Under the pieces are notes generated by a model that was not told the origin of the DNA, did no database searches, and worked only from the letters and a program-made list of their open reading frames with translations. DNA of 64,000 bases from the NCBI RefSeq assembly GCF_001194135.2, contig NC_069001.1:1284301-1348300 (forward strand), read 5' to 3'. Both the position numbers and the translations under genes were made by a program. Source of the stretch: Octopus bimaculoides (taxonomy: Eukaryota). Shown here one piece after another: positions 42,801 to 64,000 of the stretch; within the stretch, counting starts at the first letter, position 1, and the number at the start of each line of letters is the position of its first letter.

Positions 42801-45800
42801 CTGCAGCAGTACCCGGCCATGATCAGCGCCCTACATCCCATGCACTCCAGCCTCCTCTCACAGCAGCCTGCACTACCCCCTCTCATACCGTCCCTAATCT
42901 CAGACTTCAAGGCAACCATGCCTAACGAGACAGAACGTAAACAAAAGCTGCTTAACTTTATTCAAAATGAATTTGGTGGGTTTCAGTGTTCGTGGCATTC
43001 GGACAAGTTATTTATGATGTTATGTCGCCTTGTGGACCAGTGCCTATTTCTCATGGTTGAATGGGCACGCTATTCATTTTTCTTCAAAGAATTAAAGGTA
43101 AGTAAAACGCAGACATACTTTCATACATGTGAGGAGTATAGTTTTCATTATGTATAAATTTTTTAAATGTTTATGTTTTGAAACCGAAAAAATACAAATT
43201 ATGAAAAATTGATAATGCAGATTGAAGGTTTGTATGATTACCTGATATTTCAAAATTTAGGGTTAGAAACCCTTCCTGCAGGAAATTTGCAGAGAAAAGG
43301 TGTTGTTAGCTGCTTTCTCTGCTCTATAGTTATGTGGAAATCTGGAAACAGACAATACTGTTTGAATGAGCCTTCTGTTCAGACTAGTGGTTCTCAGTTG
43401 TGGCCCTCAAGCATCCTTCTGGCATCCCCCTCCCCTCGATGGTATTCCCTCTTTAAATTTTTCTTTAATCTACTTGTGTTTTATTTGTTTTGGTGTACAC
43501 CCCACCTTCAAAAACAGAAAGCAGGTTTTCAATTTTGACCCAGCATTAATAGAAATCATCAGTTTAGACTGTGCAATATGTCAAGAAGCCTGGACATATT
43601 TTTGTGATGGATTGCAACCATATAACACATTCTGCATGAACGGTGATGCCTTTCTCTACAAACAACAGTGAACCCGTGTGGAGACAAGGACAAAGACGAG
43701 CACATTGACACACACAAGTACACTCTCTTTCTCTCTTTTCTCTCTCTCTCTCTCTATTACATACACACAAACACATACGTGATACTGAAGAAGGAGCAAT
43801 AATTCCTGAAACATACATCTACACCCATTATTTTTCTATCTTCAGTAGCATTGTTTACATAGACATATTCATATATGAAATGTCATAACTTTCAGTACTG
43901 GCTCTAAATTGTAAAGAAAATCTGTGGAGACAACATCAAAAGCCACCCATACACACTCACACACACCTATTACAAAGATTTCTCAAGTTTTCAGAAGAAA
44001 CAATTCTTATTACTGCTGTTACTAAAACTTGAACCCATAACCCTTATGGTTAGTTGAGATTAGAGAAATATGAATAAAAAGAAAAACACAACAACAATAA
44101 ATAAACATAGTTTGATCCTCTTGATATTTTTCAATGTTTTTCTGTCTTTTTAGGTTGAGAACCAAATGAAACTTCTACAAAATTCTTGGAGTGAATTATT
44201 AATTTTGGATTTTTTATATCGACAACTTAACACAAATTCCACCTCAGAGTTTACATTGGTTAGTAATGTGGTGCCTGGCACCTCTGTTCATCTTCCCTCT
44301 GTTTGTGTGAGATATAGAAAGATTGTACATGCATGTGTGAGTGTGTGTGTGTGAGTGTGTATGTATATATATATAAAATAATTTCCTCTCTCTTTTGTGT
44401 TCATACAGGCAAGTGGTCACAGATTAAACGCAGATTTCTTCGATAAAATAGGTTTAGGTGACATGAGAGAGAGACTGCAGGACCTTATCAAAAAGATGCG
44501 GGAACTAAAAATTGATGAAAACGAATATGTATGTCTCAAATATTTAGTGCTTTTGAACCCTGGTAAGTGTTCAGTTGTTGTTGTTGTTGTTGTTGTTGTT
44601 ATCATCGTTGTTAAGGCAACGACCTGGCAGAATGGTTAGCAGCATCTCCTCCATCTTTATGTTCTGAGTTCAAATTCTGCCAAGGTCGACTTCGCCTTTC
44701 ATCCTTTTGGGGTCGATAAAAGGAAAAAACTAGTTGAACACTGGGGGTCTATGCAATTGACTTACACCTCCACTAAAATTGCTGGCCTTGTGCTGAAATT
44801 TGAAACCATTATTATTATTATTATTATTGTAAAGCAGCTAACCGGCAGAATTGTTGGTGCGTCAGACAAAAAAATGCTTTGCTACATTTCTTCTTGCTAT
44901 TTTTTGGTTTGAGTTCAATTGTTGCCATGGTTGACTTGCCTTTCATCCTTTTGGGATTGATACAATCAGTTTAATTTCTCCCCGAAATTACTAGCTCTGT
45001 GCCAAAATTTGAGACCTCCATGAGGCGTTGGGCCTCATGGAAGCAGTGACAGGTGACCGAGACCTTTGGCGATTATATTGTGCTTGTGTTGACCTGTCAA
45101 GCCGAGTGAGACCATGGTTGTGGCCAGTGTCAGGTCAATGGCACATAAAATACATCTACTACTCTCTCAGAGTGGTTGGCATTAGGAAGGGCATCCAGCC
45201 ATAGAAACTTTGCCAAATGATCTTAGAACCTGGAAGTCTGTCATTAAATGATGATGATGATGCTGATGAATATTAACCTTTCACATGTAAAACTATTTTA
45301 TTAAATTAAAATAAAATTAATTTGCAACAAATATATCATATGATTCTTGTAACATTTAATGTCCATGTTCCATGCTTGCATGAGTTTGACGGTTCAACAG
45401 GATGAGATGTGATCAAGCACTGCATCCTGCTCCAATGTCTGTTTTGGCATGGTTTCTACAGCTGGATGCCCTTCTAAATCCAACCACTTTATGCATATGT
45501 AACCTTTACGTGTATGTAACCTTTAATGTGTATGTAACTTTTTTACTTTGCAGACGTTGGAGGTGTGGAAAGCAGGCAACTCCTTGAAGACTGCCAGGAG
45601 AAAATCAACACTGCCTTGATGGAATACTGCACTAGTGTTTATCCCAATATGAAGGACAAGTTTGGCCAGGTTTTGTTACGCCTGCCAGAGATTCGCATGA
45701 TAAGCATGCATGGCGAGGAGTTTTTGTATATCAAACACTTAAACGGAGAGCTACCCGAGCAGACTCTCCTCACAGAGATGTTGCATTCCAAACGAAGGTG

Positions 45801-45801
45801 A
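35083..45801 (+). CDS. ftz-f1: NR5A / FTZ-F1 family nuclear receptor (SF-1/LRH-1 orthologue), 6 coding exons, 494 aa from Met at 35083
   Basis: Spliced translation gives the C4 zinc-finger DBD ([37 protein letters not shown]...[14 protein letters not shown]), the diagnostic FTZ-F1 box ([27 protein letters not shown]) and an NR5A LBD ending in AF-2 [11 protein letters not shown]. Exon lengths 118+141+719+105+154+248=1485 nt keep frame across five GT-AG introns. Confidence 0.97.
36880..37105 (+). mobile_element. SINE-like family A copy in ftz-f1 intron 1
   Basis: Family A core plus (GAT)n tail. Confidence 0.75.
38180..38797. mobile_element. Cluster of non-autonomous TTAA-ended (piggyBac-like) elements: one + copy, one inverted copy and fragments
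   Basis: Ends TTAA-(C/T)CCTTT...AAAGGGTT(A/G)AA. 38180-38410 and 38460-38698 are reverse complements (caagcttcctg.tttaaa.tgatc.aa / ttggatcactttaaaacaggaagcttg). Confidence 0.7.
38885..39110 (-). mobile_element. SINE family B copy in ftz-f1 intron 1
   Basis: aaggatgaaaggcaaaatcaaccttggtggagtttgaactcagaac, reverse orientation. Confidence 0.82.
40000..40300 (-). mobile_element. SINE family B copy in ftz-f1 intron 1
   Basis: aaggatgaaaggcaaagctgacctcggtggcatttgaactcagaac...tctgccagctcgctgcc. Confidence 0.82.
41197..41480. repeat. 28-bp minisatellite (AGCTATCTGTTGTTACAATTGTGCCATA), about 10 degenerate units
   Basis: Near-identical central units at about 41277-41332 with decaying flanks. Confidence 0.88.
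41560..41700 (+). CDS. ftz-f1: ftz-f1 coding exon 2 (recognition helix and zinc finger 2), 141 nt, phase 1-1
   Basis: Acceptor ccatttcag|GT TTC TTC AAA; donor GAA G|gtgagc; encodes [47 protein letters not shown]. Confidence 0.97.
42000..42300. repeat. Highly degenerate ~26-bp minisatellite (CAACATACCCACTGTGCC-like)
   Basis: Recurring atatac/catac-ccactgtgcc motifs. Confidence 0.55.
42379..43097 (+). CDS. ftz-f1: ftz-f1 coding exon 3 (FTZ-F1 box, hinge with Gly18, LBD helices 1-3)
   Basis: Acceptor tttttacag|CT GTC CGG; donor TTA AAG|gtaagt; ends [14 protein letters not shown]. Confidence 0.96.
44154..44258 (+). CDS. ftz-f1: ftz-f1 coding exon 4 (LBD helices 4-5), 105 nt, phase 0-0
   Basis: Acceptor ctttttag|GTT GAG AAC; donor ACA TTG|gttagt; encodes [35 protein letters not shown]. 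Confidence 0.93.
44409..44562 (+). CDS. ftz-f1: ftz-f1 coding exon 5 (LBD beta-hairpin, H6-H8)
   Basis: Acceptor catacag|GCA AGT GGT; donor CCT G|gtaagt; encodes [51 protein letters not shown]. Confidence 0.94.
44612..45015 (+). mobile_element. Two tandem SINE family B copies in ftz-f1 intron 5
   Basis: Head-core-(ATT) tail at 44612-44830, then a second more decayed copy at 44830-45015. Confidence 0.82.
45020..45265 (+). mobile_element. SINE-like family A copy in ftz-f1 intron 5
   Basis: Family A 5' part, core and GAT tail. Confidence 0.78.
45345..45490 (-). mobile_element. SINE-like family A copy, inverted relative to 45020-45265
   Basis: gttttggcatggtttctacagctggatgcccttctaaatccaaccactt is the reverse complement of the family A core. 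Confidence 0.78.
45554..45801 (+). CDS. ftz-f1: ftz-f1 last coding exon (LBD H9-H12, AF-2), stop TGA 45799-45801
   Basis: Acceptor ttttactttgcag|AC GTT; encodes [11 protein letters not shown]...[47 protein letters not shown]. Confidence 0.96.
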
Positions 45802-45964: not shown

Positions 45965-46769
45965 TGCTGTGAAGTTAATGCCGGAAATGACGAAGTGCAG
46001 TGCATTGCGACAAAAAAAAAAAGACCTTAAANNNNNNNNNNNNNNNNNNNNNNNNNNNNNNNNNNNNNNNNNNNNNNNNNNNNNNNNNNNNNNNNNNNNN
46101 NNNNNNNNNNNNNNNNNNNNNNNNNNNNNNNNNNNNNNNNNNNNNNNNNNNNNNNNNNNNNNNNNNNNNNNNNNNNNNNNNNNNNNNNNNNNNNNNNNNN
46201 NNNNNNNNNNNNNNNNNNNNNNNNNNNNNNNNNNNNNNNNNNNNNNNNNNNNNNNNNNNNNNNNNNNNNNNNNNNNNNNNNNNNNNNNNNNNNNNNNNNN
46301 NNNNNNNNNNNNNNNNNNNNNNNNNNNNNNNNNNNNNNNNNNNNNNNNNNNNNNNNNNNNNNNNNNNNNNNNNNNNNNNNNNNNNNNNNNNNNNNNNNNN
46401 NNNNNNNNNNNNNNNNNNNNNNNNNNNNNNNNNNNNNNNNNNNNNNNNNNNNNNNNNNNNNNNNNNNNNNNNNNNNNNNNNNNNNNNNNNNNNNNNNNNN
46501 NNNNNNNNNNNNNNNNNNNNNNNNNNNNNNNNNNNNNNNNNNNNNNNNNNNNNNNNNNNNNNNNNNNNNNNNNNNNNNNNNNNNNNNNNNNNNNNNNNNN
46601 NNNNNNNNNNNNNNNNNNNNNNNNNNNNNNNNNNNNNNNNNNNNNNNNNNNNNNNNNNNNNNNNNNNNNNNNNNNNNNNNNNNNNNNNNNNNNNNNNNNN
46701 NNNNNNNNNNNNNNNNNNNNNNNNNNNNNNNNNNNNNNNNNNNNNNNNNNNNNNNNNNNNNNNNNNNNN

Positions 46770-47148: not shown

Positions 47149-47595
47149 NNNNNNNNNNNNNNNNNNNNNNNNNNNNNNNNNNNNNNNNNNNNNNNNNNNN
47201 NNNNNNNNNNNNNNNNNNNNNNNNNNNNNNNNNNNNNNNNNNNNNNNNNNNNNNNNNNNNNNNNNNNNNNNNNNNNNNNNNNNNNNNNNNNNNNNNNNNN
47301 NNNNNNNNNNNNNNNNNNNNNNNNNNNNNNNNNNNNNNNNNNNNNNNNNNNNNNNNNNNNNNNNNNNNNNNNNNNNNNNNNNNNNNNNNNNNNNNNNNNN
47401 NNNNNNNNNNNNNNNNNNNNNNNNNNNNNNNNNNNNNNNNNNNNNNNNNNNNNNNNNNNNNNNNNNNNNNNNNNNNNNNNNNNNNNNNNNNNNNNNNNNN
47501 NNNNNNNNNNNNNNNNNNNNNNNNNNNNNCAGTGATTTTAAAATTTTAGAAGAGGAAAGAGGCAGAAGGGGAAATGTGGTGATTCTTTTGTTTTT

Positions 47596-50300: not shown

Positions 50301-53300
50301 TGTGTTGGGGGATGGGGGCATCTTTATGTTAAGGGACGAGGAAAAGGGTTAGAGTAGGGCAGGTTCTTGTAAGGGAGCTAAACAACTCCTCACACTTAGA
50401 AGAGAAGGTGGGAATGAACGAATGATATCCATCTCTGAAGAGGTAAATCGTGATGATGGTGTGTCCAGGTGTCACCTCAAGGTATGAGGTGAGTAGTAAT
50501 GAGTGGGGTGGGTGGTCAGAATTTGCAAGAGTATGGTGGGAGTGGGCAACAAGAGATAGGGGCAGTGGGAGACGGGATGCAGCAAAATAATGAGGCAAAG
50601 GGGTAGGAGAGAGGGAGAACTGAATTAAGATGGGCTCCCACTACTGGGTGGTTTATATTTTTATCCAGTGTTTCAATTTTGGAATCATTTCTTTAAATAT
50701 GAAGCAGATTTCTATCATTATATAGATATAGAGAGATAGATAAGGAAATAATTATATTCTCAAATGTAGGATAATGTTAATAATATAGCATGGACAGGAT
50801 AAACTCCAATGTTTTGGGAACAAAGAAAGCATTCTACCACAGTAGAGTGTAATGGTTTATTTATTGCAGACTTAGAGGCTTGTCACTCCATTTGAGTTTG
50901 CCTGGTATGTTACCAGTCCCTCATATAGGAATTGGCAAATAGACAGAGTTCTGCCGATTCCTGTGTCAGGGACTAAAACATGTCTGAGAATCTCTATGGT
51001 GACAAGCCTCTCGGTCCCCCCTAAATAAACTACCTATGTATATATATGTAGTATGTATTGTATATAAACATGAGTATATGTCTTGAAGGATATATGTATA
51101 TATAAAATTAACAAAAATATAAAAAGGGTGTATTTCAGGATCCCACCCTCTTTATCCCCCTGTTACCCAGATGAAGAAATTGAATTTATAAATGAGAAAC
51201 GGAAAATTTTTGTTTATTTTAAATAACAAAATTCAATACAGAATATATAGTTTTTATGTAAAGTCCTTATGGAACATGTGGGTCTGCATGTATTTATACA
51301 AAATATGTGTGTGTGTGTCTCACAAACACCATAAAAACATGAGGTTTTCTGCACATGTATGTATGTATATGTATATATATATATACATACATGTATCTGT
51401 GTGTCTGGAAGTATGTATCAGTGCTTTTACCCATTGAATTTGTCTTTCTGTGTGTGAAACCTTAACAAATAAGGCTTTTTGTGAAAAATTTAAGCATAAA
51501 AATATCATGGAAGGAAAGTAATGTTTAACATTTTTTTTGTTTTTTGTTTTTATTTTAAACTGAATTTTATGAGAGAGCTTCATTGCAGGAATGAAGTTGC
51601 GGGAAAGAGAGGTTGAGAAATAATCCCTCTCAAAATAAAAAAAATAAAAAACACTCTTATTTGTAGAGAGAATTATTTTAATATAATTATAGAAAGAAAA
51701 ATGCATACAAAAAAAAAATTGTTTTCAAAGAAAATTTTGAGAAAATAATTTTAAAAAATCAAATATCTGCAAAAAAAAAAAAGAAAATGGAAACTAATTG
51801 AGTGAAAATAAATCTTTGTAGAGAGAAATTTAGATATATTTTGGAGATTTTTCTGCTGAATAATTTTAAACCATTTTTCAAGCAGAGCGCTTATGATTTG
51901 AAATATTCTTTATTGATTGTTTTTTTTTCACAAGAAATTTGTGGAGAAAACAAAAACAAACAAAAGACAGAAAATATTATCGTGAGGCTGTTTTGGAAGA
52001 GAAGAATACGTTACAGTGAAGAATAACTTCTTTAACATAACAAAATGTGAGAAAAATGAGGACGAATTTAATTACACCGAAATTGGAATAAATATTTTAG
52101 TTTCTTTTTTATTTCTTTTTTAACTTTACTCTCAAGGGAAATAACTTTAAAATATTATTTACTATTTTTACTATTATCTCCCTTGATTGCTCACGCCCAT
52201 TCAAAACATTTCAACGTGTTTCGTAGAAGACATCCAAATATTTTTCTTTCTTTTAACTTAACCCTATTACTAACACTTCATATGCTGTACATGTTTCTTA
52301 ATTTTTAACGGAAAGAAGAAAAAAAAACAAGAAATTATTACTAATATCCAATACTTCACCCCACACACCATTATATCATATACAACATATTTATTTATAT
52401 ACTAATAATAATAAATTTAAGTCTATATTTATCTCTCGTCATTCCCTGCTCTCATGAATTTTTCTTCTCTAGCGTTAAATGCCTTCAACAACACAGAAAC
52501 GGAACAATTCTTTCATTTCTATGTTTGGTTTGCAAAATTCTTGATGTGAACATTTGTGCCGAAACAAATCTTGTTTTATCTCGGGTGCGTCGTTATGCCA
52601 ATAATAAACGCACCCGCTACTTCTGTTTCACGTCTTTATTATTATTATTAGTCAAATGGTTAACCGTTTAACCAACTGGCGGAATAATAAGAATCATAAT
52701 ACATGTTAAATAGAAGCGGTACTCGTGTTTATTATTGGGTGTCTCTCTCGAAATAACAGCTAAATAACGAAACCTCTTTTCTTATCTCATTCTCTTGTAA
52801 AATTATAGTCAAAATGTTGGTTATCTTAACATATATGAGTTTATAATACGCATACATGCACACACGTATACACACCCACATATTATGTATTCGATAGTTT
52901 CCCGTCTATTGTGGTACTTAAAAACAATAGAGACCATTTATCAGATCAATATTGCTGAGTGCCATAAGAGACGTGAAAGCAATGGTCACTTACTGACCAA
53001 CGACTATATAATATATATTATTCCTCAGAAAGAAATGTTTTAGAGTATGACAGACAAAGGGATTGTTGATTACATCGACCCCAGTGCGTAACTGGTACTA
53101 TTTAATCGACTCCGAAAGGATGAAAGGCAAAGTCGACCTCGGCACTATATGTATGTATTTGTGCGCGCATATATATATATGCTTGTGTACGTTTATGTAT
53201 ATATCTATGTGTGTATGTATGTATATAAATATAAACATACAAAGTACGTTCAGGAGATTTATGATAGGAATAGCATCTAACGTTGAATATATTCTCTCTC

Positions 53301-53439
53301 TGTCTCTCTCTCCCTCTTTCTCTCTCAGGTGTCCCAACGCGAGCTCAGCGTGGACGGAAACCACACGTCGAGCAAAAGGGCAAAAGCTCGCTCGATCTCG
53401 ATTTTCAGTACGATTGATATTAAATGACGAAAGTATGGA

Positions 53440-53848
53440 GGTTTATAGTGAGGACTCCCCGTTTCCGTACCAACGATACGATGGTTGTTGCACTTCTTCA
53501 TCTGTCGTTATCTCGCTGCTTGTGGAACCATCAATTACGGTGTTATGCTTATTGTATCTTTGACACGTAACTCTCCATCCTTGTGTCTGTCCTAAGGGAT
53601 GTCGCAGAGTGCTGCCTGGCTTGCTCCTCGGTTTCCAAACGCACCGCTATCGTTGTCTACTTCTTCCCTCTGGCAAGCTATGTAACGTCCTGCCAGGTGG
53701 GCTTTAATACCATTTCCACTTGTTGCCTTGTTGCAACCTCAATTCTTTTTAATTTCAAATTGTACGTTCTGTACACAATTGTTTTTAACGTTGTAGCCCT
53801 TGTAACTTCGCTAGGAGGGGGTGACCTTGACTTCGTGCTCCCCTCTTC
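53440..53848 (-). pseudogene. Decayed gag-like/ORF1 N-terminal fragment of a non-LTR retrotransposon (L1/Tx1-like, tentative)
   Basis: Minus frame from 53848: EEGSTKSRSPPPSEVTRATTLKTIVYRTYNLKLKRIEVATRQQVEMVLKPTWQDVT*LARGKK*TTIAVRLETEEQARQHSATSLRTD, with two in-frame TAG (53680, 53659) and a later frameshift. Protein-like complexity and balanced GC unlike the flanks. Family assignment is from recalled resemblance only. Confidence 0.45.
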
Positions 53849-53900
53849 TCATAAAATCCTTGCACCTCACCATCTCCCGCCTCCCAAAACGCATAAATAA

Positions 53901-56900
53901 GTACGTATGAACGAACGTACGTACGTTACTAAATACGAACGAACGAAAGAAAGAACGAATGAACGTACGAGCGGAAGAATGACCGAACGTGCGTACGTTC
54001 GTTACTTTGTTCGTACGTACATATGTACCTACTTACGTACGTTCGTTCGTAGGTACATACATACCTACGTTCGATCGTTCTTTTGTTCGTACGTACATAC
54101 GTACGTTCATTTCTTTGTTCGTTCGTTTTTTTTTTTCGTACGTACGTTCGTTCTTTCAATCTTTCGTTTGTTCGTTCCTACGTACGTTTGTTCGTTCCTA
54201 CGTACGTTTGTTCCGTCGTACGTACGCTTGTTCGTTCGTTCGTACGTATGTACCTACATTTGTTCGTTTGTTCGATCGTTCGTTCGTTCTTACGTACGTA
54301 CTTACATTCTTTCATTCTTTTCTTTCATGTTTCGTACGTTCGTTCGTTCCTAAGTACGTACGTGCGTACATTCGTTCGTTCATTTGTTCGTTGTTACGGA
54401 CGTATTTACGTTCGTTCGTACATACGTATTTACGTTCGTTCGTTCTTACGTTCTTTCTTTCGTTCGATCGTTTCTTCGTACTTCCGTACGTACCTTCGGT
54501 CGTTCGTTCTTATGTACGTAAGTACGTACGTTCATTCGTTACTTCGTTCGATCGTTCGTACGTACATACGTTCATTCAAGCGTACGTACGTACGCTCGTT
54601 CGTACGTTCATTCTTACGTATGTACGTACATACGTTCAATCGTACTTTCGTTCGTTTGTTCGTTCGTTCATACGTACGGGCGTACGTTAGTTCTTTCGTT
54701 CGTACGAACGTACGTTTGTTCGCTCGTTCCTACGTACGGATGTATGTACGTACGTACGTTCGTTTATTTTTTCGTTCTATCTTTCTTTCGTTCGCACATG
54801 CGTTCTTTCCTACGTACGTACGTTTATTTGTTCATTCGTTCCTTCGTTTGTTCTTACATGCCAACGTGCGTACGTTCTTTCGTTTGCTCGATCGTTGTCT
54901 CGTTCGTTCGTTCGTCCATTCTTTCGTTACTTCGTTCGTTCATTCGTTTGTTTGTTTCGTTCGTTCGTTTGTTTCATTCTTCCGTACGTACGTACGATCA
55001 TTCGTTCGTTCGTTCCTTCGCACGTACGTACGTACGTTTGCTCGTTCTTTCGTACGTACGTACATTCTTTCGTTCAATCGTTCGTTCATTCTTTCGTACG
55101 TTCGTTAATCTGTTCGTTCGTTCATACGTACGTACGTACATATGTACCTACTTATGTACGTTCGTTTGTTCGTTTGTACATACGTACCTTCAATTCTTTG
55201 TGCGTTCGTTCTTACATACGTAGTTACGTATGTAAATCCGTACGTACGGACGTTCGTTCGTTGCCTCGTTCGTTAGTTCTTACGTACGTACGTTCGTTCA
55301 TTAGGTCATTCGTTTGTTCGTTTCATTCGTTCGTTCATCCGTCCGTACGTTCGTTCGTTCTGACATACGTTCGTTCGTACGTACGTACGTTTGTTCGTTC
55401 GTTCGTTCATTCATATATATGTACGTAGGAACATACGTACGTTCGTTCGTAATTACGTTCCTTCTTTCGTTTATTCGTTCGTACGTACGAACTTACGTTC
55501 ATTCGTTCTTTCGTTCGATCGTTCCTTCCTACTTACGTACGTACGTACCTTCGTTCGTTCGTACGTACATTCATTCATTCGTACGTACGTTCGTTCGTTC
55601 GTTCATTTGTTCGTTCCTTCGTTGTTACGTACGTACGGACGTATTTACGTTCGTTCGTACGTAGGTACTTAAATACGTCCGTACGTACGTTCGTTCGTAC
55701 ATACGTAATTACGTTCGTTCGTTCGATCGTTCCTTCCTACTTACGTACGTACGTACCTTCGTTCGTTCGTACGTACGTATGTTCGTTCGTTCGTTCTTAC
55801 ATACGTAAGTACGTACGTTCATTCGTTACGTCGTTCTTTCCTTCGTTCGTTCGTTCGATCGTTCCTACGTGCGTACGTTCATTCAATCGTACGCTCGTTC
55901 GTACGTTCATTCTTACGTATGTACGTACATACGTTCAATCGTTCGTTTGTTCGTTCGTTCATACGTACGGACGTACGTTAGTTCTTTCTTTCGTACGTAC
56001 TACGTTCGTTCGATCGTTCCTACGTACGGATGTATGTACGTACGTTCGTTCGTACGTACGTTTGTTTGTTTTCTTGTTCTATCTTTCTTTCGTTCGCACA
56101 TGCGTTCTTTCCTACGAACGTACGTTTGTTTGTTCATTCGTTCCTTCGTTTGCTCTTAAATACGAGCATGCGTACGTTCTTTCGTTTGCTCGAACGTTGT
56201 CTCGTTCGTTCTTTCGTCCATTCTTTCGTTACTTCGTTCGGTCATTCACTCGTTCGTTCGTTCGTTTGTTTCGTTCTTCTATACGTACGTACGATCATTC
56301 GTTTGTTCGTTCATTCCTTCGCACGTACGTACGTGTGTTCGTTCGTTCGTTCTTTCGTACGTACGTACATTCTTTCGTTCAATCGTTCGTTCATTCTTTC
56401 GTACGTTCGTTCGTTCGTGCGTTCGTTCGCTTGTTTGTTCGTACGTTCTTTCGTACGTACTTTCGTTCGTTCGTTCGTGCGTACGTTCGTTAGTTTGTTA
56501 GTTCGTTCATACGTACATATGTACCTACTTATGTACGTTTGTTCGTTCGTTCGTTCGTTTGCACATACGTACGTTCAATTCTTTGTTCGTTCTTTTTTCG
56601 TACCTACGTACATTCGTTCGTTCAATCGTTCGTTTTTTCGTTCGTACGTACGTTCGTCCGTTTCTTTGTTCGTTCGTTCTTACATACGTACTTACGTAAA
56701 TCCGTACGTACGGACGTTCGTTCGTTTGTTCGTTCGTTCGTCCGTCCGTACGTTCGTTCGTTCGTCCGTCCGTACGTTCGTTCGTTCGCACATACGTTCG
56801 TTCGTACGTACATACGTTTGTTCGTTCGTTCATTCATATATATGTACGTACGTTCGTTCGTTCATTCATATATATGTACGTACGTTCGTTCGTTCGTAAT

Positions 56901-59900
56901 TACGTTCCTTCTTTCGTTTATTCGTTCGTACTTACGAACTTACTTACGTACGCACGTTCTTTCCTTCCTTCGATCATTTGTTCATACGTACGATCGTTTG
57001 TTCGTACGTACGTTCGTTCGTACGTACGTACCTTCGTTCGTACGTACGTACATTCATTCGTACGTACGTACATTCGTTCATACGTACGTTCGTTCGTTCG
57101 TTCATCATATGTACGTACGAACATACGCACGCTCGTTCGTTCGTTCGTTTGTTCGATCTTTCATACGTACTTACGTACATACATCCGTGCGTATGGACGT
57201 TCGTTCGTTTCATTCGTTCGTTCTTCCGTCCGTGCGTTCGTTCAGACATACCTTCGTTCGTATGTACGTACGTTTGTTCGTTCGTTCATTCAGATATATG
57301 TACGTAGGAACATACGTACGTACGTTCATACATACGTTCCTTCATAAGTACGTACGTTTGTTTGTACGTACGTTCGTACATTCGTTCGTACGTACGTACC
57401 TTCGTTCGTACGTACGTACATTCATTCGTTCGTACGTACGTTCGTTCGTTTATTCATACATATGTACGTACGAACATACGCACGCTCGTTCGTTTGTTCA
57501 TTTGTTCGTTTCTTCGTTGTTACGTACGTACGGACGTATTTACGTTCGTTCGTACATAGGTACTTATATACGTACTACGTACGTTCGTTCGTACATACGT
57601 AATTACGTTCGTTTGTTCTTACGTTCTTTCTTTCGATCGATCGTTCCTTCCTACTTACGTACGTACGTACCTTCGTTCGTTCGTACTTACGTACGTACGT
57701 TCGTTCGTTCGTTCTTACATACGTAAGAACGTACATTCATTCGTTACTTCGTTCGATCGTTCCTACGTACGTACGTTCATTCAATCGTACGTACGTACGC
57801 TCGTTCGTACGTTCATTCTTACGTATGTACGTACATACGTTCAATCGTTCTTTCGTTCATTTGTTCATACGTACGGACGTACGTTAGTTCTTTCTTTTGT
57901 ACGTAGGTACGTTCGTTCGATCGTTCCTACGTACGGATGTACGTACGTTCGTTTGTACGTACGTTCGTTCGTACGTACGTTCATTTGTTTTTTTGTTCTA
58001 TCTTTATTTCGTTCGCACATGCGTTCTTTCCTACGTACATACGTTTGTTTGTTCATTCGTTCCTTCGTTTGTTCTTACATACGAACGTGCGTACGTTCTT
58101 TCGTTTGCTCGATCGTTGTCTCGTTCGTTCGTTCGTCCATTTTTTCGTTACTTCCTTCGTTCTTTCGCTCGATCGTTCATTCGTTTGTTTGTTTCGTTCG
58201 TTCGCTCATTCTTTCGTTCGTTTCGTTCTTCCGTACGTACGTACGATCATTCGTTCGTTCGTTCGTTTGTTCGTTCGTTCCTTTGCACGTACGTACGTAC
58301 GTTTCTTCGTTCGTTCGTTCAATCGTTCGTTCATTCTTTCGTACGTGCGTACGTTCGTTAGTTTGTTTGTTCGTTCGCTCGTTCGTTCGTACGTTCTTTC
58401 GTTCGTTCGTACGTACGTGAGTACGTTCGTTAGTTTGTTCGTTCGTTCATACGTACGTACGTACATATGTACCTACTTATGTATGTAATTACGTTCCTTA
58501 TTTTGTTTATTCGTTCGTACGTACGAACTTACTAACGTACGCACGTTCTTTCCTTCCTTCGATCATTTGTTCATACGTACGATCGTTCGTTCGTACGTTC
58601 GTTCGTACGTACGTTCGTTCGTTCGTTCATTCATATGTACGTACGAACATACGCACGCTCGTTCGTTCGTTCCTTCGCATGTACGTACGTACGTTTGTTC
58701 GTTCGTTCGTTCTTTCGTACGTACGTACATTCATTCGTTCAATCGTTCGTTCATTCTTTCGTATGTTCGTTCGTACGTACGTTCGTTAGTTTGTTCGTTC
58801 GTTCGCTCGTTTCTTCGTACGTTCGTTAGTTTGTTCCTTCGTTCATACGTACGTACGTACGTACATATGTACCTACTTATGTACGTTCGTTTGTTCGTTC
58901 GTACATACGTACGTTCAATTCTTTGTTCGTTCGTTCTTACATACGAACTTACGTACCTAAATCCGTACGTACGGACGTTCGTTTGTTCGTTCGTTCGTTT
59001 CATTCGTTCGTTCGTCCGTCCGTACGTTCGTTCGTTCTGACATACGTTCGTTCGTACGTACGTTTGTTCGTTCGTTCGTTCGTTCATTCATATATATGTA
59101 CGCAGGAACATACGTACGTTCGTTCGTTATTTCTTTCGTTCGTTCGTAATTACGTTCCTTCTTTCGTTTATTCGTTCGTACGTACGAACTTACTTACCTA
59201 CGCACGATCTTTCTTTCCTTCGATCATTTGTTCATACGTACGATCGTTCGTTCGAACGTACGTTCGTTCGTACGTACGTACCTTCGTTCGTTCGTTCATT
59301 CATACATATGTACGTACGAACATACGCACGGTTGTTCGTTTGTTCGTTCGTTCATTTGTTTGTTCGTTCCTTCGTTGTTACGTAGGTACGGACGTAGGTA
59401 CTTATATACGTACCTACGTACGTTCGATCGTACATACGTAATTACGTTCGTTCGTTCTTACGTTCTTTCTTTCGTTCGATCGTTCCTTCCTACTTACGTA
59501 CGTACGTACGTACCTTCGTCCGTTCGTACTTACGTACATACGTTTGTTCTTACGTGCGTAAGTACGTACGTTCATTCGTTACTTCGTTCTTTCCTTCGTT
59601 CGATCGTTAGTACGTACGTACGTTCATTCAATCGTACGAACGTGCGTTCATTCAATCGTACGTACGTACGCTCGTTCGTACGTTCATTCTTACGTATGTA
59701 CGTACATACGTTCAAACGTTCGTTTGTTCGTTCGTTCCTTAATTTTGTTCGTTCATACGTACGGACGTACGTTAGTTCTTTCGTTCGTACGTACGTACGT
59801 TCGTTCGCTCGTTCGATCGTTCCTACGTACGGATGTATGTACGTACGTTCTTTTGTTTTTTCGTTCTATCTTTCTTTCTTTCGCACATGCGTTCTTCCCT

Positions 59901-62900
59901 ACGTACGTACGTTTATTTGTTCATTCGTTCCTTCGTTTGTACTTACATACGAACGTGCGTACGTTCTTTCGTTTGCTCGATAGTTGTCTCGTTCATTCGT
60001 TCGTCCATTCTTTCGTTACTTCGTTCGTTCTTTCGCTCGTTCGTTCATTCGTTTGTTTGTTTCCTTCGATCGTTCTTTCGTTCGTTCGTTCTTTCATTCG
60101 TTCGTTCTTTCGTTCGTTCGTTTCGTTCTTCCGTACGTACGTACGATCATTCGTTCGTTCGCTCGTACGTTCAATTCTTTGTTCGTTCGTTCTTTTTTCG
60201 TACTTACGTACGTTCGTTCGTTCAATCGTTCGTTCGTTCTTTCGTTCGTACGTACGTTAGTCCGTTTCTTTCTTCGTTCGTTTGTTCGATCGTTCGTTCG
60301 TTCTTACATACGTACTTACGTATGTAAATCCTTACGTACGGACGTTCATTCGTTGCCTCGTTCTTTAGTTCTTTCGTTCTTTCGTACGTACGTACGTTCG
60401 TTCATTAGGTCGTTCGTTTGTTCGTTTCATTCGTTCGTTCGTTCGTAATTACGTTCCTTCTTTCGTTTATTCGTTCGTACGTACGAACTTACTTATGTAC
60501 GCACGTTCTTTCCTTCTTTCGACCATTTGTTCATACGTACGATCGTTCGTACGTACATTCGTTCGTACGTACATACGTTCGTTCGTACGAACGTACGTTA
60601 GTTCGTACATACGTAATTACGTTCGTTCGTTCTTACGTTCTTTCTTTCGTTCGATCGTTCCTTCATACTTACGTACGTACCTACCTACCTTCGTTCGTTC
60701 GTACTTACGTACGTACGTTCGTTCTTACGTACGTAAGTACGTACGTTCATTCGTTACTTCCTTCTTTTCTTCGTTTGTTTGTTCGATCGTTCGTACGTAC
60801 GTACGTTCATTCAATCGTACGTACGTTCATTCAATCGTACGTACGTTCATTCAGACGTACGTACGTACGCTCGTTCGTACGTTCATTCTTACGTGTGTAC
60901 GTACATACGTTCAATCGTTCGTTTGTTCGTTCGTTCCTTCATTTCGTTCGTTCATACGTACGGACGTACGTTAGTTCTTTCGTTCGTACGTACGTTCATT
61001 CGCTCGTTCGATCGTTCCTACGTACGGGTGTATGTACGTACGTTCGTACGTACGTTCGTTTGTTTTTTTGTTCTATCTTTCTTTCGTTCGCACATGCGTT
61101 CTTTCCTACGTACGTACGTTTGTTTGTTCATTCGTTCCTTCGTTTGTTCTTACATACGAACGTGCGTACGTTCTTTTGTTTGTTCGATCGTTGTCCCGTT
61201 CGTTCGTTCGTCCATTCTTTCGTTACTTAGTTCGTTCTTTCGCTCGTTCGTTCATTCGTTTGTTTGTTTCCTTCGATCGTTCGTTCGCTCGTTCTTTCGT
61301 TCTTTCGTTCGTTCGTTTGTTTCGTTCTTCCGTACGTACGTATGATCATTCGTTCGTTCCTTCGCACGTACGTATGTAAATTTGTTCGTTCGTTCGTTCT
61401 GACATACGTTCGTACGTACGTACGTTTTTTCGTTCGTTCGTTCTTTCATATATATGTACGTAGGAACATACGTACGTTCGTTCGTTCATAATTACGTTCC
61501 TTCTTTGTTCTTTGTTCATACGTACGATCGTTCGTACTTTCGTTAGTTTGTTCGTTCGTTCATACGTACGTACGTACATATTTACCTACTTATGTACGTT
61601 CGTTTGTTTGTTCGAACATACGTACGTTCAATTCTTTGTTCGTTCGTTCTTCTTTCGTACCTACGTACGTTCGTTCGTTTAATCGTTCGTACGTACGTTA
61701 GTCCGTTTCTTTGTTCGTTCGTTTGTTTGATCGTTCGTTAGTTCTTTCGTTCTTTCGTACGTACGTACTTCGTTCATTAGGTCGATCGTTTGTTCGTTCG
61801 TTCGTTTCAATCGTTCGTTCGTTTCAATCGTTCGTTCGTCCGTCCGTACGTTCATTCGTTTCTTCGGTCTTTCCTTCGTTCGTTCGTTCGTTCGAATGTA
61901 CGTACGTTCATTCAATCGTACGTACGTACGCTCGTTCTTACGTTCATTCTTACGTATGTACGTACATACGTTCAATCGTTCTTTCGTTCGTTTGTTCGTT
62001 CGTTCCTTAATTTCGTTCGTTCTTTCGTACGTCCGTACATTCTTTCGTTCAATCGTTCGTTCATTCCTTCGTACGTACGTTCGTTAGTTTGTTCGTTCGC
62101 TCGTTCGTTCGTACGTTCGTTCGTACGTACGTGTGTACGTTCGTTAGTTTGTTCGTTCATACGTACGTACGTACATATGTACCTATTTATGTACGTTCGT
62201 TTGTTCGTTCGTTCGTATATACGTACGTTCAATTCTTTGTTCGTCCGTTTTTTTTTCGTACCTACGTACGTTCAATTCTTTGTTCGTTCTTTTTTCGTAC
62301 CTACGTACGTTCGTTCGTTTAATCGTTCGTTCTTTCGTTCGAACGTACGTTAGTCCGTTTCTTTGTTCGTTCGTTTGTTCGATCGTTCGTTCGTTCTTAC
62401 ATACGTACTTACGCACGTAAATCCGTACGTACGGACGTTCGTTCGTTGCCTCGTTCTTTCGTACGTACGTACGTTCGTTCATTAGGTCGTTAGTTTTTTC
62501 GTTCGTTCGTTTCATTCGTTCGTTCGTTTCATTCGTTCGTCCGTCCGTACGTTCGTTCGTTCTGACATACGTTCGTACGTACGTACGTTTTTTCGTTCGT
62601 TCGTTCATTCATATATATGTATGTAGGAACATACGTACGTTCGTTCGTTCTTTCGTTCGTTCATAATTACGTTCCTTCTTTCGTTTATTCGTTCGTACGT
62701 ACGAACTTACTTACGTACGCACGTTCTTTCCTTCCTTCGACCATTTGTTCATACGTACGATCGTTCGTTCGTACGTTCGTTAGTTTGTTCGTTCGTTCAT
62801 ACGTACGTACGTACATATTTACCTAGTTATGTTCGTTCGTTCTTTTTTCGTACCTACGTACGTTCGTTCGTTTAATCGTTCGTACGTACGTTAGTCCGTT

Positions 62901-64000
62901 TCTTTGTTCGTTCTTACATACGTACTTACGTACATAAATCCGTACGTACGGACGTTCGTTCGTTAGTTCTTTCGTTCTTTCGTACGTACGTACTTCGTTC
63001 ATTAGGTCGTTCGTTTGTTCGTTCGTTCGTTTCAATCGTTCGTTCGTTCGTCCGTCCGTACGTTAGTTCGTTTTGACATACGTTCGTTCGTACGTACGTT
63101 TGTTCGTTCGATCGTTCGAACGTACGTGCGTTCATTCAATCGTACGTACGTACGCTCGCTTTTACGTTCATTCTTACGTATGTACGTACGTACGTTCAAT
63201 CGTTCTTTCGTTCGTTTGTTCGTTCGTTCCTTAATTTCGTTCGTTCATACGTACGGACGTACGTTAGATCTTTCGCACGTACGTACGTACCTTTGTTCGT
63301 TCTTTCGTACGTCCGTACATTCTTTCGTTCAATCGTTCGTTAATTCCTTCGTACGTACGTTCATTCGTGCGTTCGTTAGTTTGTTCGTTCGCTCGTTCGT
63401 TCGTACGTACGTGCGTACGTTCGTTAGTTTGTTCGTTCGTTCATACGTACGAACATACATATGTACCTACTTATGTACGTTCGTTTGTTCGTTCGTTCGT
63501 ACATACGTACGTTCAATTCTTTGTTCGTTCGTTCGTACGTACGTTCGTCCGTTTTATTGTTCGATCGTTCGTTCGTTCGTTGCCTCGTTCTTTCGTACGT
63601 ACGTACGTTCGTGCATTAGGTCGTTAGTTTTTTCGTTCGTTCGTTTCATTCGTTCGTTCGTCCGTCCGTACGTTCGTTCGTTCTGACATACGTTCGTACG
63701 TACGTATGTTTTTTCGTTCGTTCGTTCGTTCATTCATATATATGTACGTAGGAACATACGTACGTTCGTTCTTTCGTTCGTTCGTAATTACGTTCCTTCT
63801 TTCGTTTATTCGTTCGTACGTACGAACTTACTTACGTACGCACGTTCTTTCCTTCCTTCGACCATTTGTTCATACGTACGATCGTTCGTTCGTTCGTACG
63901 TTCGTTAGTTTGTTCGTTCGTTCATACGTACGTACGTACATATGTACCTACTTATGTACGTTCGTTTGTTCGTTCGTTCATTCATATATATGTACGTAGG
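53901..64000. repeat. CpG-rich tetranucleotide-derived satellite (TTCG/TACG words) with 1.1-1.9 kb higher-order repeats; runs off the window end
   Basis: Continuous 4-nt register of TTCG, TACG, TTTG, TTCA, TACA, TTCT. The landmark ATTCTTACGTATGTACGTAC recurs at about 54610, 55909, 57815, 59686, 60885 (variant), 61946 and 63170. Confidence 0.97.

What the first reader, a model, noticed from the sequence alone, without database searches (positions are those of the whole stretch)
53901..64000. >10 kb CpG-dense satellite written in a 4-nt alphabet with variable-length higher-order repeats
Seen: the array keeps a 4-nt register using TTCG and TACG plus single-change variants (TTTG, TTCA, TACA, TATG), many of which are the products expected from methyl-CpG deamination. 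It is very CpG-dense and T-rich on the + strand, unlike the CA/TG-dominated rest of the window. It is not a simple repeat. The landmark ATTCTTACGTATGTACGTAC recurs with spacings of about 1299, 1906, 1871, 1199, 1061 and 1224 bp; GCACATGCGTTC recurs at about 54794, 56096, 58015, 59883 and 61090 with matching spacings; the 14-bp palindrome TCCGTACGTACGGA is at 55237, 56701, 58962, 62422 and 62939. So microsatellite-derived monomers have been re-amplified as 1.1-1.9 kb units with block shuffling. Established: (TACG)n is self-complementary and alternates purine/pyrimidine, so it can form hairpins, cruciforms or Z-DNA. Inference: a heterochromatic, centromere-like or subtelomeric satellite, or a methylation sink, lying 8 kb downstream of a developmental nuclear receptor. 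I know of no description of it but cannot search.
Basis: partly seen in the sequence, partly recalled or inferred. Interest (0 to 1): 0.75.

Follow-up and report, generated by a model that had tools for sequence, protein, structure and literature searches.

The report
CpG-dense tetranucleotide-derived tandem repeat array
The last 10 kb of the window is a real, non-coding tandem array built from the 4-base words TTCG and TACG and re-duplicated in loosely periodic 1.1-1.9 kb patches. It is an unusual example of a well-known kind of repeat, and nothing here shows that it has a function.

Summary
From 53,898 to the window end the sequence keeps a 4-nt register: 97.3% of 1,500 inter-CpG distances are multiples of 4. 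It is 52% TTCG/TACG and carries 15 CpG per 100 bp (o/e 3.3-3.5, against a median of 0.29 elsewhere). All three landmarks recur at the stated positions.

It is not a pure microsatellite, because the longest pure runs are (TTCG)5 and (TACG)4. It is a patchwork of 0.1-0.56 kb blocks shared at 84-98% identity, and 79% of indels between copies are multiples of 4. This is the known pattern of a simple-sequence-derived complex satellite, as in human HSat2/3 or snake Bkm (GATA/GACA).

The methylation reading is not supported:
- Among block copies, CpG transitions are only 1.6-2.6 times as frequent as other transitions.
- TTCT, which is not a deamination product, is as common as TTCA or TTTG.
- The non-repetitive 1.5 kb upstream is also CpG-replete (o/e 1.14).

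Together these suggest a germline-hypomethylated domain.

Centromeric, subtelomeric or heterochromatic status could not be tested. I found no relatives, no copy-number data, no telomere repeats and no published description. The organism was not verified. The assembly is a gapped draft, so block order is uncertain. Interest is modest.

The parts
53898..53990 (-). Left-most segment of the array, in inverted (A-rich, GAACG/GTACG) orientation.
   Evidence: Sequence read directly. Inverted-repeat pair I3 has arms 53898-53974 and 53983-54059. Minus-strand BLAST matches 53934-53969 to array blocks at 59113-59148 (94%) and 60093-60121.
53905..54054 (.). Fold-back (imperfect ~70-bp-arm palindrome) where the array orientation flips, centred near 53979.
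   Evidence: Single-strand DNA fold of -40.7 kcal/mol against a shuffle mean of -25.2, z = -6.5, with 0 of 200 shuffles as stable.
53991..64000 (+). Main array with the T-rich strand on +. It uses the TTCG/TACG tetramer alphabet, holds 1,501 CpGs, and is cut by the window end.
   Evidence: TRF period 4; register statistics; tetramer census; CpG o/e.
54610..55908 (+). Unit U1 (1,299 bp), delimited by the landmark ATTCTTACGTATGTACGTAC.
   Evidence: Mapped to reference unit U2 at 84-97% identity with a ~0.8 kb deletion relative to U2.
55909..57814 (+). Unit U2 (1,906 bp), the longest unit, used as the reference.
57815..59685 (+). Unit U3 (1,871 bp).
59686..60884 (+). Unit U4 (1,199 bp).
60885..61945 (+). 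Unit U5 (1,061 bp). It starts at the 1-mismatch copy of the landmark.
61946..63169 (+). Unit U6 (1,224 bp). It retains only ~80-145 bp of the head block, and its other blocks are in a different order.
63170..64000 (+). Unit U7, truncated by the window end.
52401..53897 (.). Non-repetitive CpG-replete flank (o/e 1.14). It shares the array's lack of CpG depletion but not its sequence.
   Evidence: the other 186 500-bp windows have median 0.29, 95th percentile 0.57 and maximum 0.96; no 4-nt periodicity and no excess of k-mers shared with the array; no Pfam domain in its ORFs.
53331..53438 (+). Isolated 28S rRNA fragment inside the CpG-replete flank. It follows a (TC)n run directly and lies 460 bp before the array.
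   Evidence: Rfam RF02543, 74.1 bits, E = 7e-16, model positions 2660-2763 of 3401, alignment shown.

Best explanation
This is a genuine, non-coding, simple-sequence-derived complex tandem array. I see no evidence that it is a functional element.

**Step 1, shown by anatomy.** Two tetramers that differ by one base, TTCG and TACG, were expanded locally by replication slippage. The result is a mosaic of short same-type runs (typically 2-6 TTNN-type tetramers and 1-3 TANN-type) that keeps a strict 4-nt register.

**Step 2, shown.** Point changes produced single-step variants such as TTCA, TTCT, TTTG, TACA, ATCG and TTCC.

**Step 3, shown as pattern; mechanism inferred.** Unequal exchange or segmental duplication copied 0.1-0.56 kb blocks of this mosaic many times. 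This gave a loose 1.06-1.9 kb periodicity with deletions, insertions and re-ordering. One fold-back inversion marks the left edge.

**Step 4, shown.** Tetramer slippage continued after the duplications, because most indels between copies are multiples of 4.

**Step 5, inferred.** The very high CpG content persists because the array lies in a domain that is not subject to strong germline CpG methylation. That domain starts about 1.5 kb upstream, in unique sequence. CpGs therefore decay at nearly the ordinary substitution rate.

The long open reading frames are a by-product of an alphabet that contains no stop codons.
For: - **Register.** 97.3% of inter-CpG distances are multiples of 4. TRF finds period 4 over 9.9 kb.
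- **Blocky arrangement.** Tetramer types cluster into runs far more than in shuffles. Singleton runs number 79 observed against 283 expected for TTNN, and 97 against 356 for TANN. The longest pure runs are (TTCG)5 and (TACG)4.
- **Block duplication.**
  - 98 stringent self-alignments of at least 90 bp were found; those listed run at about 85-99% identity.
  - Any-versus-any identity is ~70%.
  - Every unit maps onto U2.
  - The head block aligns across five units at 90-94% identity.
- **Slippage after duplication.** 88 of 111 gaps are multiples of 4.
- **Weak CpG decay.**
  - CpG-column transitions are 0.105 per site against 0.041 at other columns.
  - Polarised CpG C>T is 0.099 and G>A 0.070, against non-CpG C>T 0.154.
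  - Head-block singletons give 0.110 against 0.065-0.068.
- **CpG-replete unique flank.** o/e is 1.14 against a median of 0.29.
- **Not coding.** Stop-free stretches occur in all three + frames, 16/13/11. There are no Pfam hits. Database 'homologues' are translations of other microsatellites.
- **Assemblable as written.** The longest exact internal repeat is 109 bp. Only 2% of positions lie in non-unique 61-mers.
Against: - There is no independent assembly, read or methylation data for this locus or species. The genuineness of the array and the hypomethylation are therefore inferred from sequence alone.
- The window is a gapped draft with nine N runs. 26% of array positions lie in non-unique 31-mers, so block order and total length could be partly assembler choices.
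- Substitution counts are small, at tens of events. Polarisation by majority can misassign direction. At the upper bound the CpG excess could reach about 6-fold if every A>G and T>C were a mis-polarised CpG loss.
- Recent amplification alone could also explain CpG retention in the array, though not in the unique flank.
- The absence of a detected function is not evidence that there is none.
Confidence: 0.6

Rival explanations
1. The array is one locus of an abundant heterochromatic satellite (centromere-like or subtelomeric). It is heavily CpG-methylated, acts as a methylation sink, and is decaying by methyl-CpG deamination.
For: - The array is over 10 kb and open-ended at the window edge.
- It has kb-scale repeat units like many satellites.
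- Deamination-type tetramers make up 41-47% of single-step variants, against 17% expected if all changes were equally likely.
- If the organism is an octopus, satellites are reported to be relatively more methylated than other repeats there (PMC9476566).
Against: - CpG transitions among block copies are only 1.6-2.6 times other transitions, and no higher than non-CpG C>T.
- 52% of tetramers still carry CpG.
- TTCT (G>T) is as common as TTCA.
- The unique flank is CpG-replete too.
- There are no telomere repeats in the window.
- The array lies 8 kb from a conserved single-copy gene.
- No related arrays were found anywhere.
Confidence: 0.15
2. Assembly artefact. The repeat exists, but its length, block order and 'variable units' were produced by a short-read assembler or scaffolder. 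Alternatively, the CpG-replete segment from about 52.4 kb onward is mis-joined to the NR5A scaffold.
For: - The window is a draft with nine N gaps.
- 51% of array positions lie in non-unique 20-mers and 26% in non-unique 31-mers.
- CpG content changes abruptly at about 52.4 kb.
- The patchwork order of blocks is what graph mis-traversal could produce.
Against: - There are no N runs after 47529.
- The longest exact internal repeat is only 109 bp, and 98% of 61-mers are unique.
- Copies differ by 2-16% with many 4-nt indels, which is the opposite of a collapsed repeat.
- The head block recurs in consistent order with its landmarks.
Confidence: 0.12
3. The array belongs to an rDNA-derived or mobile-element-derived module. 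It would be either an orphaned piece of rDNA intergenic spacer or the tandem-repeat tail of an element that also carries the 28S fragment and the 460-bp unique segment.
For: - A 28S fragment lies at 53331-53438, 460 bp upstream, on the same strand and in the same CpG-replete domain.
- rDNA spacers commonly hold CpG-rich subrepeat arrays. This rests on my own knowledge, not on a test here.
Against: - Only 108 nt of 28S is present, from an internal region (model positions 2660-2763 of 3401). There are no other rRNA pieces in the window.
- The unique segment and its ORF have no relatives and no Pfam domain.
- No tRNA or SINE head was found.
- No terminal signals could be sought, because the right end lies outside the window.
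Confidence: 0.06
4. A functional chromatin element. The array would be a repeat-born giant non-methylated CpG platform that recruits CXXC-type or Polycomb/Trithorax machinery, or acts as a boundary downstream of NR5A.
For: - CpG density is 15 per 100 bp over at least 10 kb with weak CpG decay.
- The CpG-replete flank suggests long-term hypomethylation.
- The array is close to a developmental regulator.
Against: - No conservation data exist. The one orthologous contig found ends before the region.
- Units diverge freely (84-98% identity) with no conserved core beyond what copy history explains.
- GC content is only 42%.
- Everything about function is inference.
Confidence: 0.05

Closest known systems
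Human satellites 2 and 3 (HSat2/3), derived from the pentamer CATTC
   Same: [quoted passage not shown] Diverged one-step variants are arranged into kb-scale repeat units, for example the 1.77 kb HSat2A2 unit. Some variants contain CpG (PMC4022460; PMC11305138).
   Different: - The unit here is 4 nt, not 5, and two co-dominant words (TTCG, TACG) replace a single ancestral word.
- Every canonical unit here carries a CpG.
- Only one array of at least 10 kb is known here, against Mb-scale pericentromeric blocks.
- The units here are less regular.
- HSat2/3 are methylated heterochromatin. The sequence signs here point away from methylation.
Bkm (banded krait minor) satellite: interspersed GATA and GACA tetranucleotides
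   Same: A satellite written in two tetramers that differ by a single base, interspersed within a larger repeat unit (PMC5793158; PMC3215666 and PMC2346481).
   Different: - Bkm has no CpG.
- Bkm accumulates on sex-specific heterochromatin (W/Y) and is dispersed at many loci.
- There is no evidence here for sex linkage, dispersal or abundance.
Compound or interrupted tetranucleotide microsatellites ((AACG)n/(ACGT)n class)
   Same: They share the same motif classes and the same slippage mechanism. Short TTCG/TACG compound patches of 20-100 bp, and ORF translations of such patches of about 55-110 residues (roughly 150-350 bp), exist in other genomes.
   Different: - Length is about 10 kb against tens to hundreds of bp.
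- There are no long pure runs here; the maximum is 5 units.
- A kb-scale duplication structure is superimposed.
Crustacean simple-sequence and complex G+C-rich satellites (hermit crab (TAGG)n satellite; land crab ~2.1 kb G+C-rich satellite with amplified oligonucleotide domains). Recalled from my own knowledge, not checked here.
   Same: A tetranucleotide-based satellite and a ~2 kb complex unit whose variants differ by amplification or deletion of short-motif domains. These have reported unusual DNA structures at alternating purine-pyrimidine tracts.
   Different: Different motifs and phylum. Those are abundant satellites isolated on density gradients, and no abundance data exist here.

Membership tests
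Pure microsatellite (SSR) | Uninterrupted tandem copies of one 1-6 bp unit | tested here: not met
   The longest pure runs are (TTCG)5 and (TACG)4. Only 52% of in-register tetramers are canonical. TRF gives 70% matches.
Simple-sequence-derived complex satellite (HSat2/3-like, Bkm-like) | The register of a short ancestral unit is retained across the array | tested here: met
   97.3% of inter-CpG distances are multiples of 4. Identity at lag 4 is 0.70, against 0.13-0.22 at lags 1-3.
Simple-sequence-derived complex satellite (HSat2/3-like, Bkm-like) | Diverged variants are organised into longer (0.1 to several kb) repeating units | tested here: met
   Landmarks recur every 1.06-1.9 kb. Blocks recur at 84-98% identity against a 70% background. 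The five-unit head-block alignment has 88% mean column identity.
Satellite DNA in the strict sense | High genomic copy number, with long arrays at one or more chromosomal domains | not testable with these tools
   Only one open-ended array of at least 10.1 kb is visible. No reads or whole assembly are available. Searches of protein and metagenome collections found no related arrays.
Satellite DNA in the strict sense | Heterochromatic, centromeric or subtelomeric location | not testable with these tools
   No chromosomal coordinates are available. There are no telomere repeats in the window. A single-copy gene lies 8 kb away.
Regular higher-order repeat (alpha-satellite sense) | A fixed multimer of monomers, repeated with much higher identity between multimers than between monomers | tested here: inconclusive
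   Unit-to-unit identity (84-98%) exceeds the background (70%). However, unit length varies from 1,061 to 1,906 bp, and block content and order differ between units. Block order may be affected by assembly.
CpG island / non-methylated island | CpG o/e above ~0.6 over more than 0.5 kb | tested here: met
   o/e is 3.3-3.5 in the array and 1.14 in the unique flank.
CpG island / non-methylated island | G+C content above ~50-55% | tested here: not met
   GC is 0.42 in the array and 0.39 in the flank.
CpG island / non-methylated island | Unmethylated in the germline | tested here: inconclusive
   The evidence is indirect only. CpG transitions are 1.6-2.6 times other transitions among block copies. 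No methylation data are available.
rDNA intergenic spacer | Lies between the 3' end of a 28S gene and the next 18S gene | tested here: not met
   The only rRNA match in 64 kb is a 108-nt internal 28S fragment.
Protein-coding repeat | One reading frame preferred, with homology to real proteins or domains | tested here: not met
   Stop-free stretches occur in all three + frames. There is no Pfam match. Database hits are microsatellite translations.

The most novel reading that the evidence does not exclude
The TTCG/TACG family is not a one-off local array. It would be either a lineage-specific major satellite marking a chromosomal domain (centromere or chromosome end), or a repeat-born, constitutively unmethylated giant CpG platform that organises chromatin next to NR5A. 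Either way it would be an undescribed, extremely CpG-dense satellite that escapes CpG decay in an otherwise CpG-poor genomic neighbourhood.
Probability: 0.1. Interest if true: 0.55.

Novelty: new member of a known kind. Interest (0 to 1): 0.3.

Why it matters
If real, the array is a clean natural example of how a satellite-like array is built in two layers: tetramer slippage, then kb-scale duplication. Slippage is still visible after the duplications.

Its CpG content makes it a sensitive recorder of germline methylation. With 1,500 CpGs in 10 kb, even moderate methyl-CpG hypermutability would be obvious, and it is not seen.

The sharp change from a CpG-poor NR5A region to a CpG-replete domain about 1.5 kb before the array is the more interesting lead. 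It could mark a methylation or chromatin boundary, or a mis-join.

Practically, such an array will break short-read assemblies and confound CpG-island and miRNA predictors. The sub-threshold Rfam miRNA hits found here are artefacts of the repeat.

Tried and rejected
1. **Translated search for related arrays.**
   - The 395-aa array ORF against 5.8 billion proteins, and a 289-aa ORF against 1.84 billion representatives with HMMER, gave only low-complexity matches.
   - The matches are translations of other (TTCA/TTCG/TACA)n microsatellites, at no more than 67% identity over short stretches.
   - Short-contig ORFs may have been missed, so this is a weak negative.
2. **Flank ORF 53583-53897 against the same collection.** No hit. 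There is no sign that the junction belongs to a repeated element.
3. **Exact 20-mer TACGTTCGTTCGTACGTACG in JGI metagenome contigs.** It found 28 loci, all patches of 100 bp or less. Most belong to an unrelated dispersed element.
4. **Orthologous locus.**
   - The closest NR5A exon relatives are unnamed Logan and ENA contigs.
   - The 60.9-kb ENA contig ends inside the last NR5A exon region, so it has no downstream sequence.
   - The Logan contigs are 1.9 kb and about 92% identical, so they come from another species.
   - An exact look-up of the window's own exon ORF found nothing.
5. **Organism identification.**
It is unverified.
6. **Literature.** Nine searches (eight on the topic and one for the SRA run numbers) found no description of a TTCG/TACG satellite. 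Dfam and Repbase cannot be searched here.
7. **Coding potential.** Rejected.
8. **Rfam 'miRNA' hits inside the array** (mir-297, mir-3149, mir-1277 and others, 21-39 bits against gathering scores of 55-101). These are chance matches to palindromic low-complexity sequence.
9. **rDNA spacer idea.** Rejected as membership.
10. **Intermediate periodicity.** None dominates between 4 nt and the kb scale. Autocorrelation decays smoothly, with only faint bumps at 20, 36 and 56-60.


Full report
**What is there**

Reading 53.4-57 kb directly shows unique sequence up to about 53,897, followed by a monotonous tetranucleotide text. TRF calls one period-4 array at 54068-63983, with 2,474 copies, consensus CGTT and 70% matches. 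The array runs to the window end.

- The 10,010 bp from 53,991 hold 1,501 CpGs, or 15 per 100 bp.
- 97.3% of the distances between successive CpGs are multiples of 4, against 21.6% in a control stretch.
- About 40 phase shifts occur, roughly one per 250 bp.
- Cut in register, 2,396 tetramers are TTCG 28.3%, TACG 23.5%, TTCA 6.2%, TTCT 5.9%, TTTG 5.1%, TACA 2.8%, ATCG 2.6%, TTCC 2.5% and TATG 2.2%, plus rarer forms.
- CpG o/e per 2 kb is 3.33-3.50 in the array and 0.13-0.53 in windows up to 46 kb.
- TG+CA dinucleotides are three times rarer in the array than elsewhere.
- The + strand is 43% T and 14.5% A.

The 'missing' copy of the 20-mer at 60885 has one mismatch. This reproduces the spacings 1299, 1906, 1871, 1199, 1061 and 1224.

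**Refinements of the anatomy**

1. **Not a microsatellite in the strict sense.** The longest pure runs are (TTCG)5 and (TACG)4. The two tetramer classes form short runs, with far fewer singletons than a shuffle gives: 79 against 283, and 97 against 356. Local slippage of each word would produce this pattern.
2. **Uniform background similarity.** Any part of the array aligns to any other at about 70% because of the shared alphabet. With stringent scoring, 98 self-alignments of at least 90 bp remain, and those listed run at about 85-99% identity.
3. **A patchwork of units.** Mapping everything onto the longest unit (U2, 55909-57814) shows that the units share blocks in a broadly similar order. 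There are large deletions, insertions and some re-ordering.
4. **A shared head block.** A head block of about 400 bp aligns across five units with 88% mean column identity. Pairwise identity is 90-94%, with no neighbour gradient. 'Variable-length higher-order units with block shuffling' is a fair description, although 'patchwork of segmental duplications' is more accurate than a regular higher-order repeat.
5. **Slippage continued.** Of 111 gaps between block copies, 88 (79%) are multiples of 4: 65 of 4 nt, 18 of 8 nt and 5 of 12 nt.
6. **An inverted left edge.** The left-most ~90 bp (53898-53990) are in the opposite orientation. With the following sequence they form a fold-back of about 70-bp arms, at -40.7 kcal/mol and z = -6.5.
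7. **No dominant intermediate period** between 4 nt and the kb scale.

**Is it coding or a known RNA?**

No.
- Stop-free stretches of at least 90 codons occur in all three + frames, 16/13/11. This is because neither (TTCG)n nor (TACG)n contains a stop codon in any frame.
- The ORFs have no Pfam domain.
- Their best database matches are translations of other tetranucleotide microsatellites.
- Rfam at gathering thresholds finds nothing in the array. The permissive scan gives only sub-threshold miRNA-family matches typical of palindromic low-complexity DNA.

**The methylation question**

These variants do make up 41% of the single-step derivatives of TTCG and 47% of those of TACG, against 17% if all twelve changes were equally likely. 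But TTCT, a G>T change, is as frequent as TTCA or TTTG (142 against 149 and 123). TTCC and ATCG are common too. These raw counts are also inflated by block amplification.

A cleaner test uses differences between duplicated blocks.
- **Columns joined through alignments of at least 88% identity, polarised by majority.** CpG C>T is 0.099 per site and CpG G>A is 0.070. Non-CpG C>T is 0.154, non-CpG G>A 0.111, A>G 0.074 and T>C 0.028.
- **Unpolarised.** Transitions occur at 0.105 per CpG column against 0.041 per other column, a 2.6-fold difference. Transversions are 0.072 against 0.048.
- **Singletons in the five-copy head block.** CpG transitions are 0.110, against 0.065-0.068 elsewhere.

The CpG excess is therefore 1.6-2.6-fold, and at most about 6-fold if every A>G and T>C is a mis-polarised CpG loss. 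From established knowledge, methylated CpGs in heavily methylated genomes mutate roughly an order of magnitude faster than other sites. That signature is not seen here.

The non-repetitive 1.5 kb upstream of the array (52401-53900) gives independent evidence.
- Its CpG o/e is 1.14.
- The other 186 500-bp windows have median 0.29, 95th percentile 0.57 and maximum 0.96.
- This flank has no 4-nt periodicity and shares no excess of k-mers with the array. Its CpG content is not a by-product of the repeat.

The simplest reading is that the window crosses into a domain at about 52.4 kb that has not undergone the CpG depletion of the NR5A region. This is an inference. Recent origin, foreign origin or a scaffold mis-join are alternatives.

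**Surroundings**

- **NR5A/FTZ-F1 gene.** Its exons lie on the + strand at about 41.5-45.8 kb. Pfam finds zf-C4 and the nuclear-receptor ligand-binding domain. The exon at 42396 begins with the FTZ-F1 box, and named relatives are NR5A2/FTZ-F1. The last coding exon ends at 45801, 8.1 kb before the array.
- **28S fragment.** Inside the CpG-replete flank, directly after a (TC)n run, lies a 108-nt fragment of 28S rRNA. It is at 53331-53438 on the + strand, scores 74 bits and covers model positions 2660-2763 of 3401. It is the only rRNA piece in the window, so the array is not an rDNA spacer. Whether the fragment, the 460-bp unique segment and the array arrived together is unknown.
- **Other features.** No tRNA, no Pfam domain in flank ORFs and no telomere repeats were found.
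- **Draft quality.** Nine N runs show that the window is a gapped draft scaffold. None lies after 47,529.

**Related sequences elsewhere**

Every route available gave nothing close.
- Translated searches found only generic microsatellite translations.
- Two representatives, P0255 and P0338, are translations of short mixed TTCG/TACG patches. The alphabet therefore exists elsewhere at the 100-300 bp scale.
- An exact 20-mer scan of metagenome contigs found 28 loci, all patches of 100 bp or less.
- The flank ORF has no relatives.
- The nearest NR5A relatives are unnamed contigs from other species. They do not reach the downstream region.
- The species could not be identified.
- For context only: octopus has the highest SSR count of 719 eukaryotes surveyed (PMC6387519). 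In O. bimaculoides fewer than 10% of CpGs are methylated, mainly in gene bodies. Repeats are largely unmethylated there, except for somewhat higher levels on satellites (PMC9476566).

**Could it be an assembly artefact?**

- The longest exact internal repeat is 109 bp. Only 2% of positions lie in non-unique 61-mers, but 26% lie in non-unique 31-mers.
- Copies differ by 2-16% with many 4-nt indels, so this is not a collapsed repeat.
- The order of some blocks and the total length could still depend on assembler choices. Only long reads can settle this.

**DNA structure**

TACG-rich stretches can form hairpins as single strands (-19 to -31 kcal/mol, z from -0.7 to -4.1). TTCG-rich stretches cannot (-2.5 to -3.4 kcal/mol, z at or above 0). 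Because TACG runs are at most 16 bp, cruciform or Z-DNA potential is local and modest. The exception is the fold-back at the left edge.

**Explanation and comparison**

The best-supported account is a neutral, two-layer repeat. Tetramer slippage builds and keeps remodelling a TTCG/TACG mosaic. Unequal exchange or segmental duplication copies 0.1-0.56 kb pieces of it into a loosely periodic array. CpGs persist because the locus is not strongly methylated in the germline.

This is the same kind of object as human HSat2/3. Those are 'diverged arrangements of 5-bp repeats' from an ancestral CATTC, with kb-scale units such as the 1.77 kb HSat2A2 unit (PMC4022460). It also resembles the snake Bkm satellite, written in the two tetramers GATA and GACA (PMC5793158).

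It differs in four ways:
- its motifs;
- a CpG in every canonical unit;
- the sequence-based signs against methylation;
- the complete lack of evidence for abundance or heterochromatic location.

I file it as a new member of a known kind. Nine literature searches (eight on the topic and one for the SRA run numbers) found no description of it. Dfam and Repbase could not be consulted.

**Verdict**

The methylation part is not supported. The chromosomal-role part is untested. Interest is modest at 0.3. The most useful lead is the abrupt CpG-poor to CpG-replete transition about 1.5 kb before the array, together with the weak CpG decay in a 1,500-CpG array. Both are directly testable with existing kinds of data.

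Noticed in passing
window 53331-53438 (+): Isolated 108-nt 28S rRNA fragment (Rfam LSU_rRNA_eukarya, 74 bits, model positions 2660-2763 of 3401). It follows a (TC)n run directly and lies 460 bp upstream of the array. It is the only rRNA piece in 64 kb. Rfam did not report it when only 52000-54200 was submitted, or in 'evalue' mode.
   Followed up: partly
window 52401-53897: Non-repetitive sequence with CpG o/e 1.14, against a median of 0.29 and a maximum of 0.96 in the other 186 500-bp windows. The CpG-replete domain therefore begins about 1.5 kb before the array. It could be a methylation or chromatin boundary, DNA of different origin, or a mis-join.
   Followed up: partly
window 53898-54059: The array starts with a ~90-bp segment in inverted orientation. 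This forms a ~70-bp-arm fold-back with the next segment (DNA hairpin -40.7 kcal/mol, z = -6.5). It suggests a hairpin or template-switch event, or an inversion breakpoint, at the array edge.
   Followed up: yes
window 41514-45801 (+): NR5A/FTZ-F1-type nuclear receptor exons: the second zinc-finger half, the FTZ-F1 box plus a hinge with a long poly-Gly run, and ligand-binding-domain exons. The closest relatives are unnamed contigs (96% aa, ~92% DNA in Logan SRR11869391/4; 77% aa in ENA ERZ21867824). The species was not identified.
   Followed up: partly
window 1187-1329, 3762-3771, 4300-4309, 6378-6863, 9561-9705, 15128-15203, 25525-26090, 46032-46769, 47149-47529: Nine runs of N, which are scaffold gaps. 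The window comes from a gapped draft assembly. There is no gap inside or next to the array.
   Followed up: no
window 53991-64000, tetramer census: Strand asymmetry of variants. TTCT (G>T on the + strand) occurs 142 times, but TTAG (C>A on the + strand) only 39 times. Position 4 of TTCG varies to A, T and C, while position 3 varies almost only to T. This is unexplained. It may be a mutational or amplification bias that keeps the + strand pyrimidine-rich.
   Followed up: no
window 51345-51412, 53145-53247 and many sites in the array: Sub-threshold Rfam matches to miRNA families built on low-complexity hairpins (mir-297, mir-466, mir-1277, mir-3149). They fall on (TATG/TGTA)-type microsatellites and on TACG-rich stretches. 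They are artefacts, all far below gathering scores.
   Followed up: yes
L004, L007-L009, L012, L014, L016-L019, L022, L025, L026, L029, L031 (JGI metagenome contigs): The 20-mer TACGTTCGTTCGTACGTACG sits inside a conserved dispersed element (...ggtaaggtgtccg[20-mer]tccgtaacggtgggcgtggc...). The element is present on at least 15 contigs of a few related metagenome projects. It is presumably a repeat of some host or eukaryote genome and is unrelated to the array.
   Followed up: no
L001 16400-16900 (ENA contig ctg91487l, orthologous NR5A locus of another species): The intron before the last NR5A exon carries a ~450-bp (TATAG/TATAC)n-type tandem repeat. No TTCG/TACG sequence occurs in the 17 kb available, and CpG o/e there is 0.0-0.5.
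   Followed up: no
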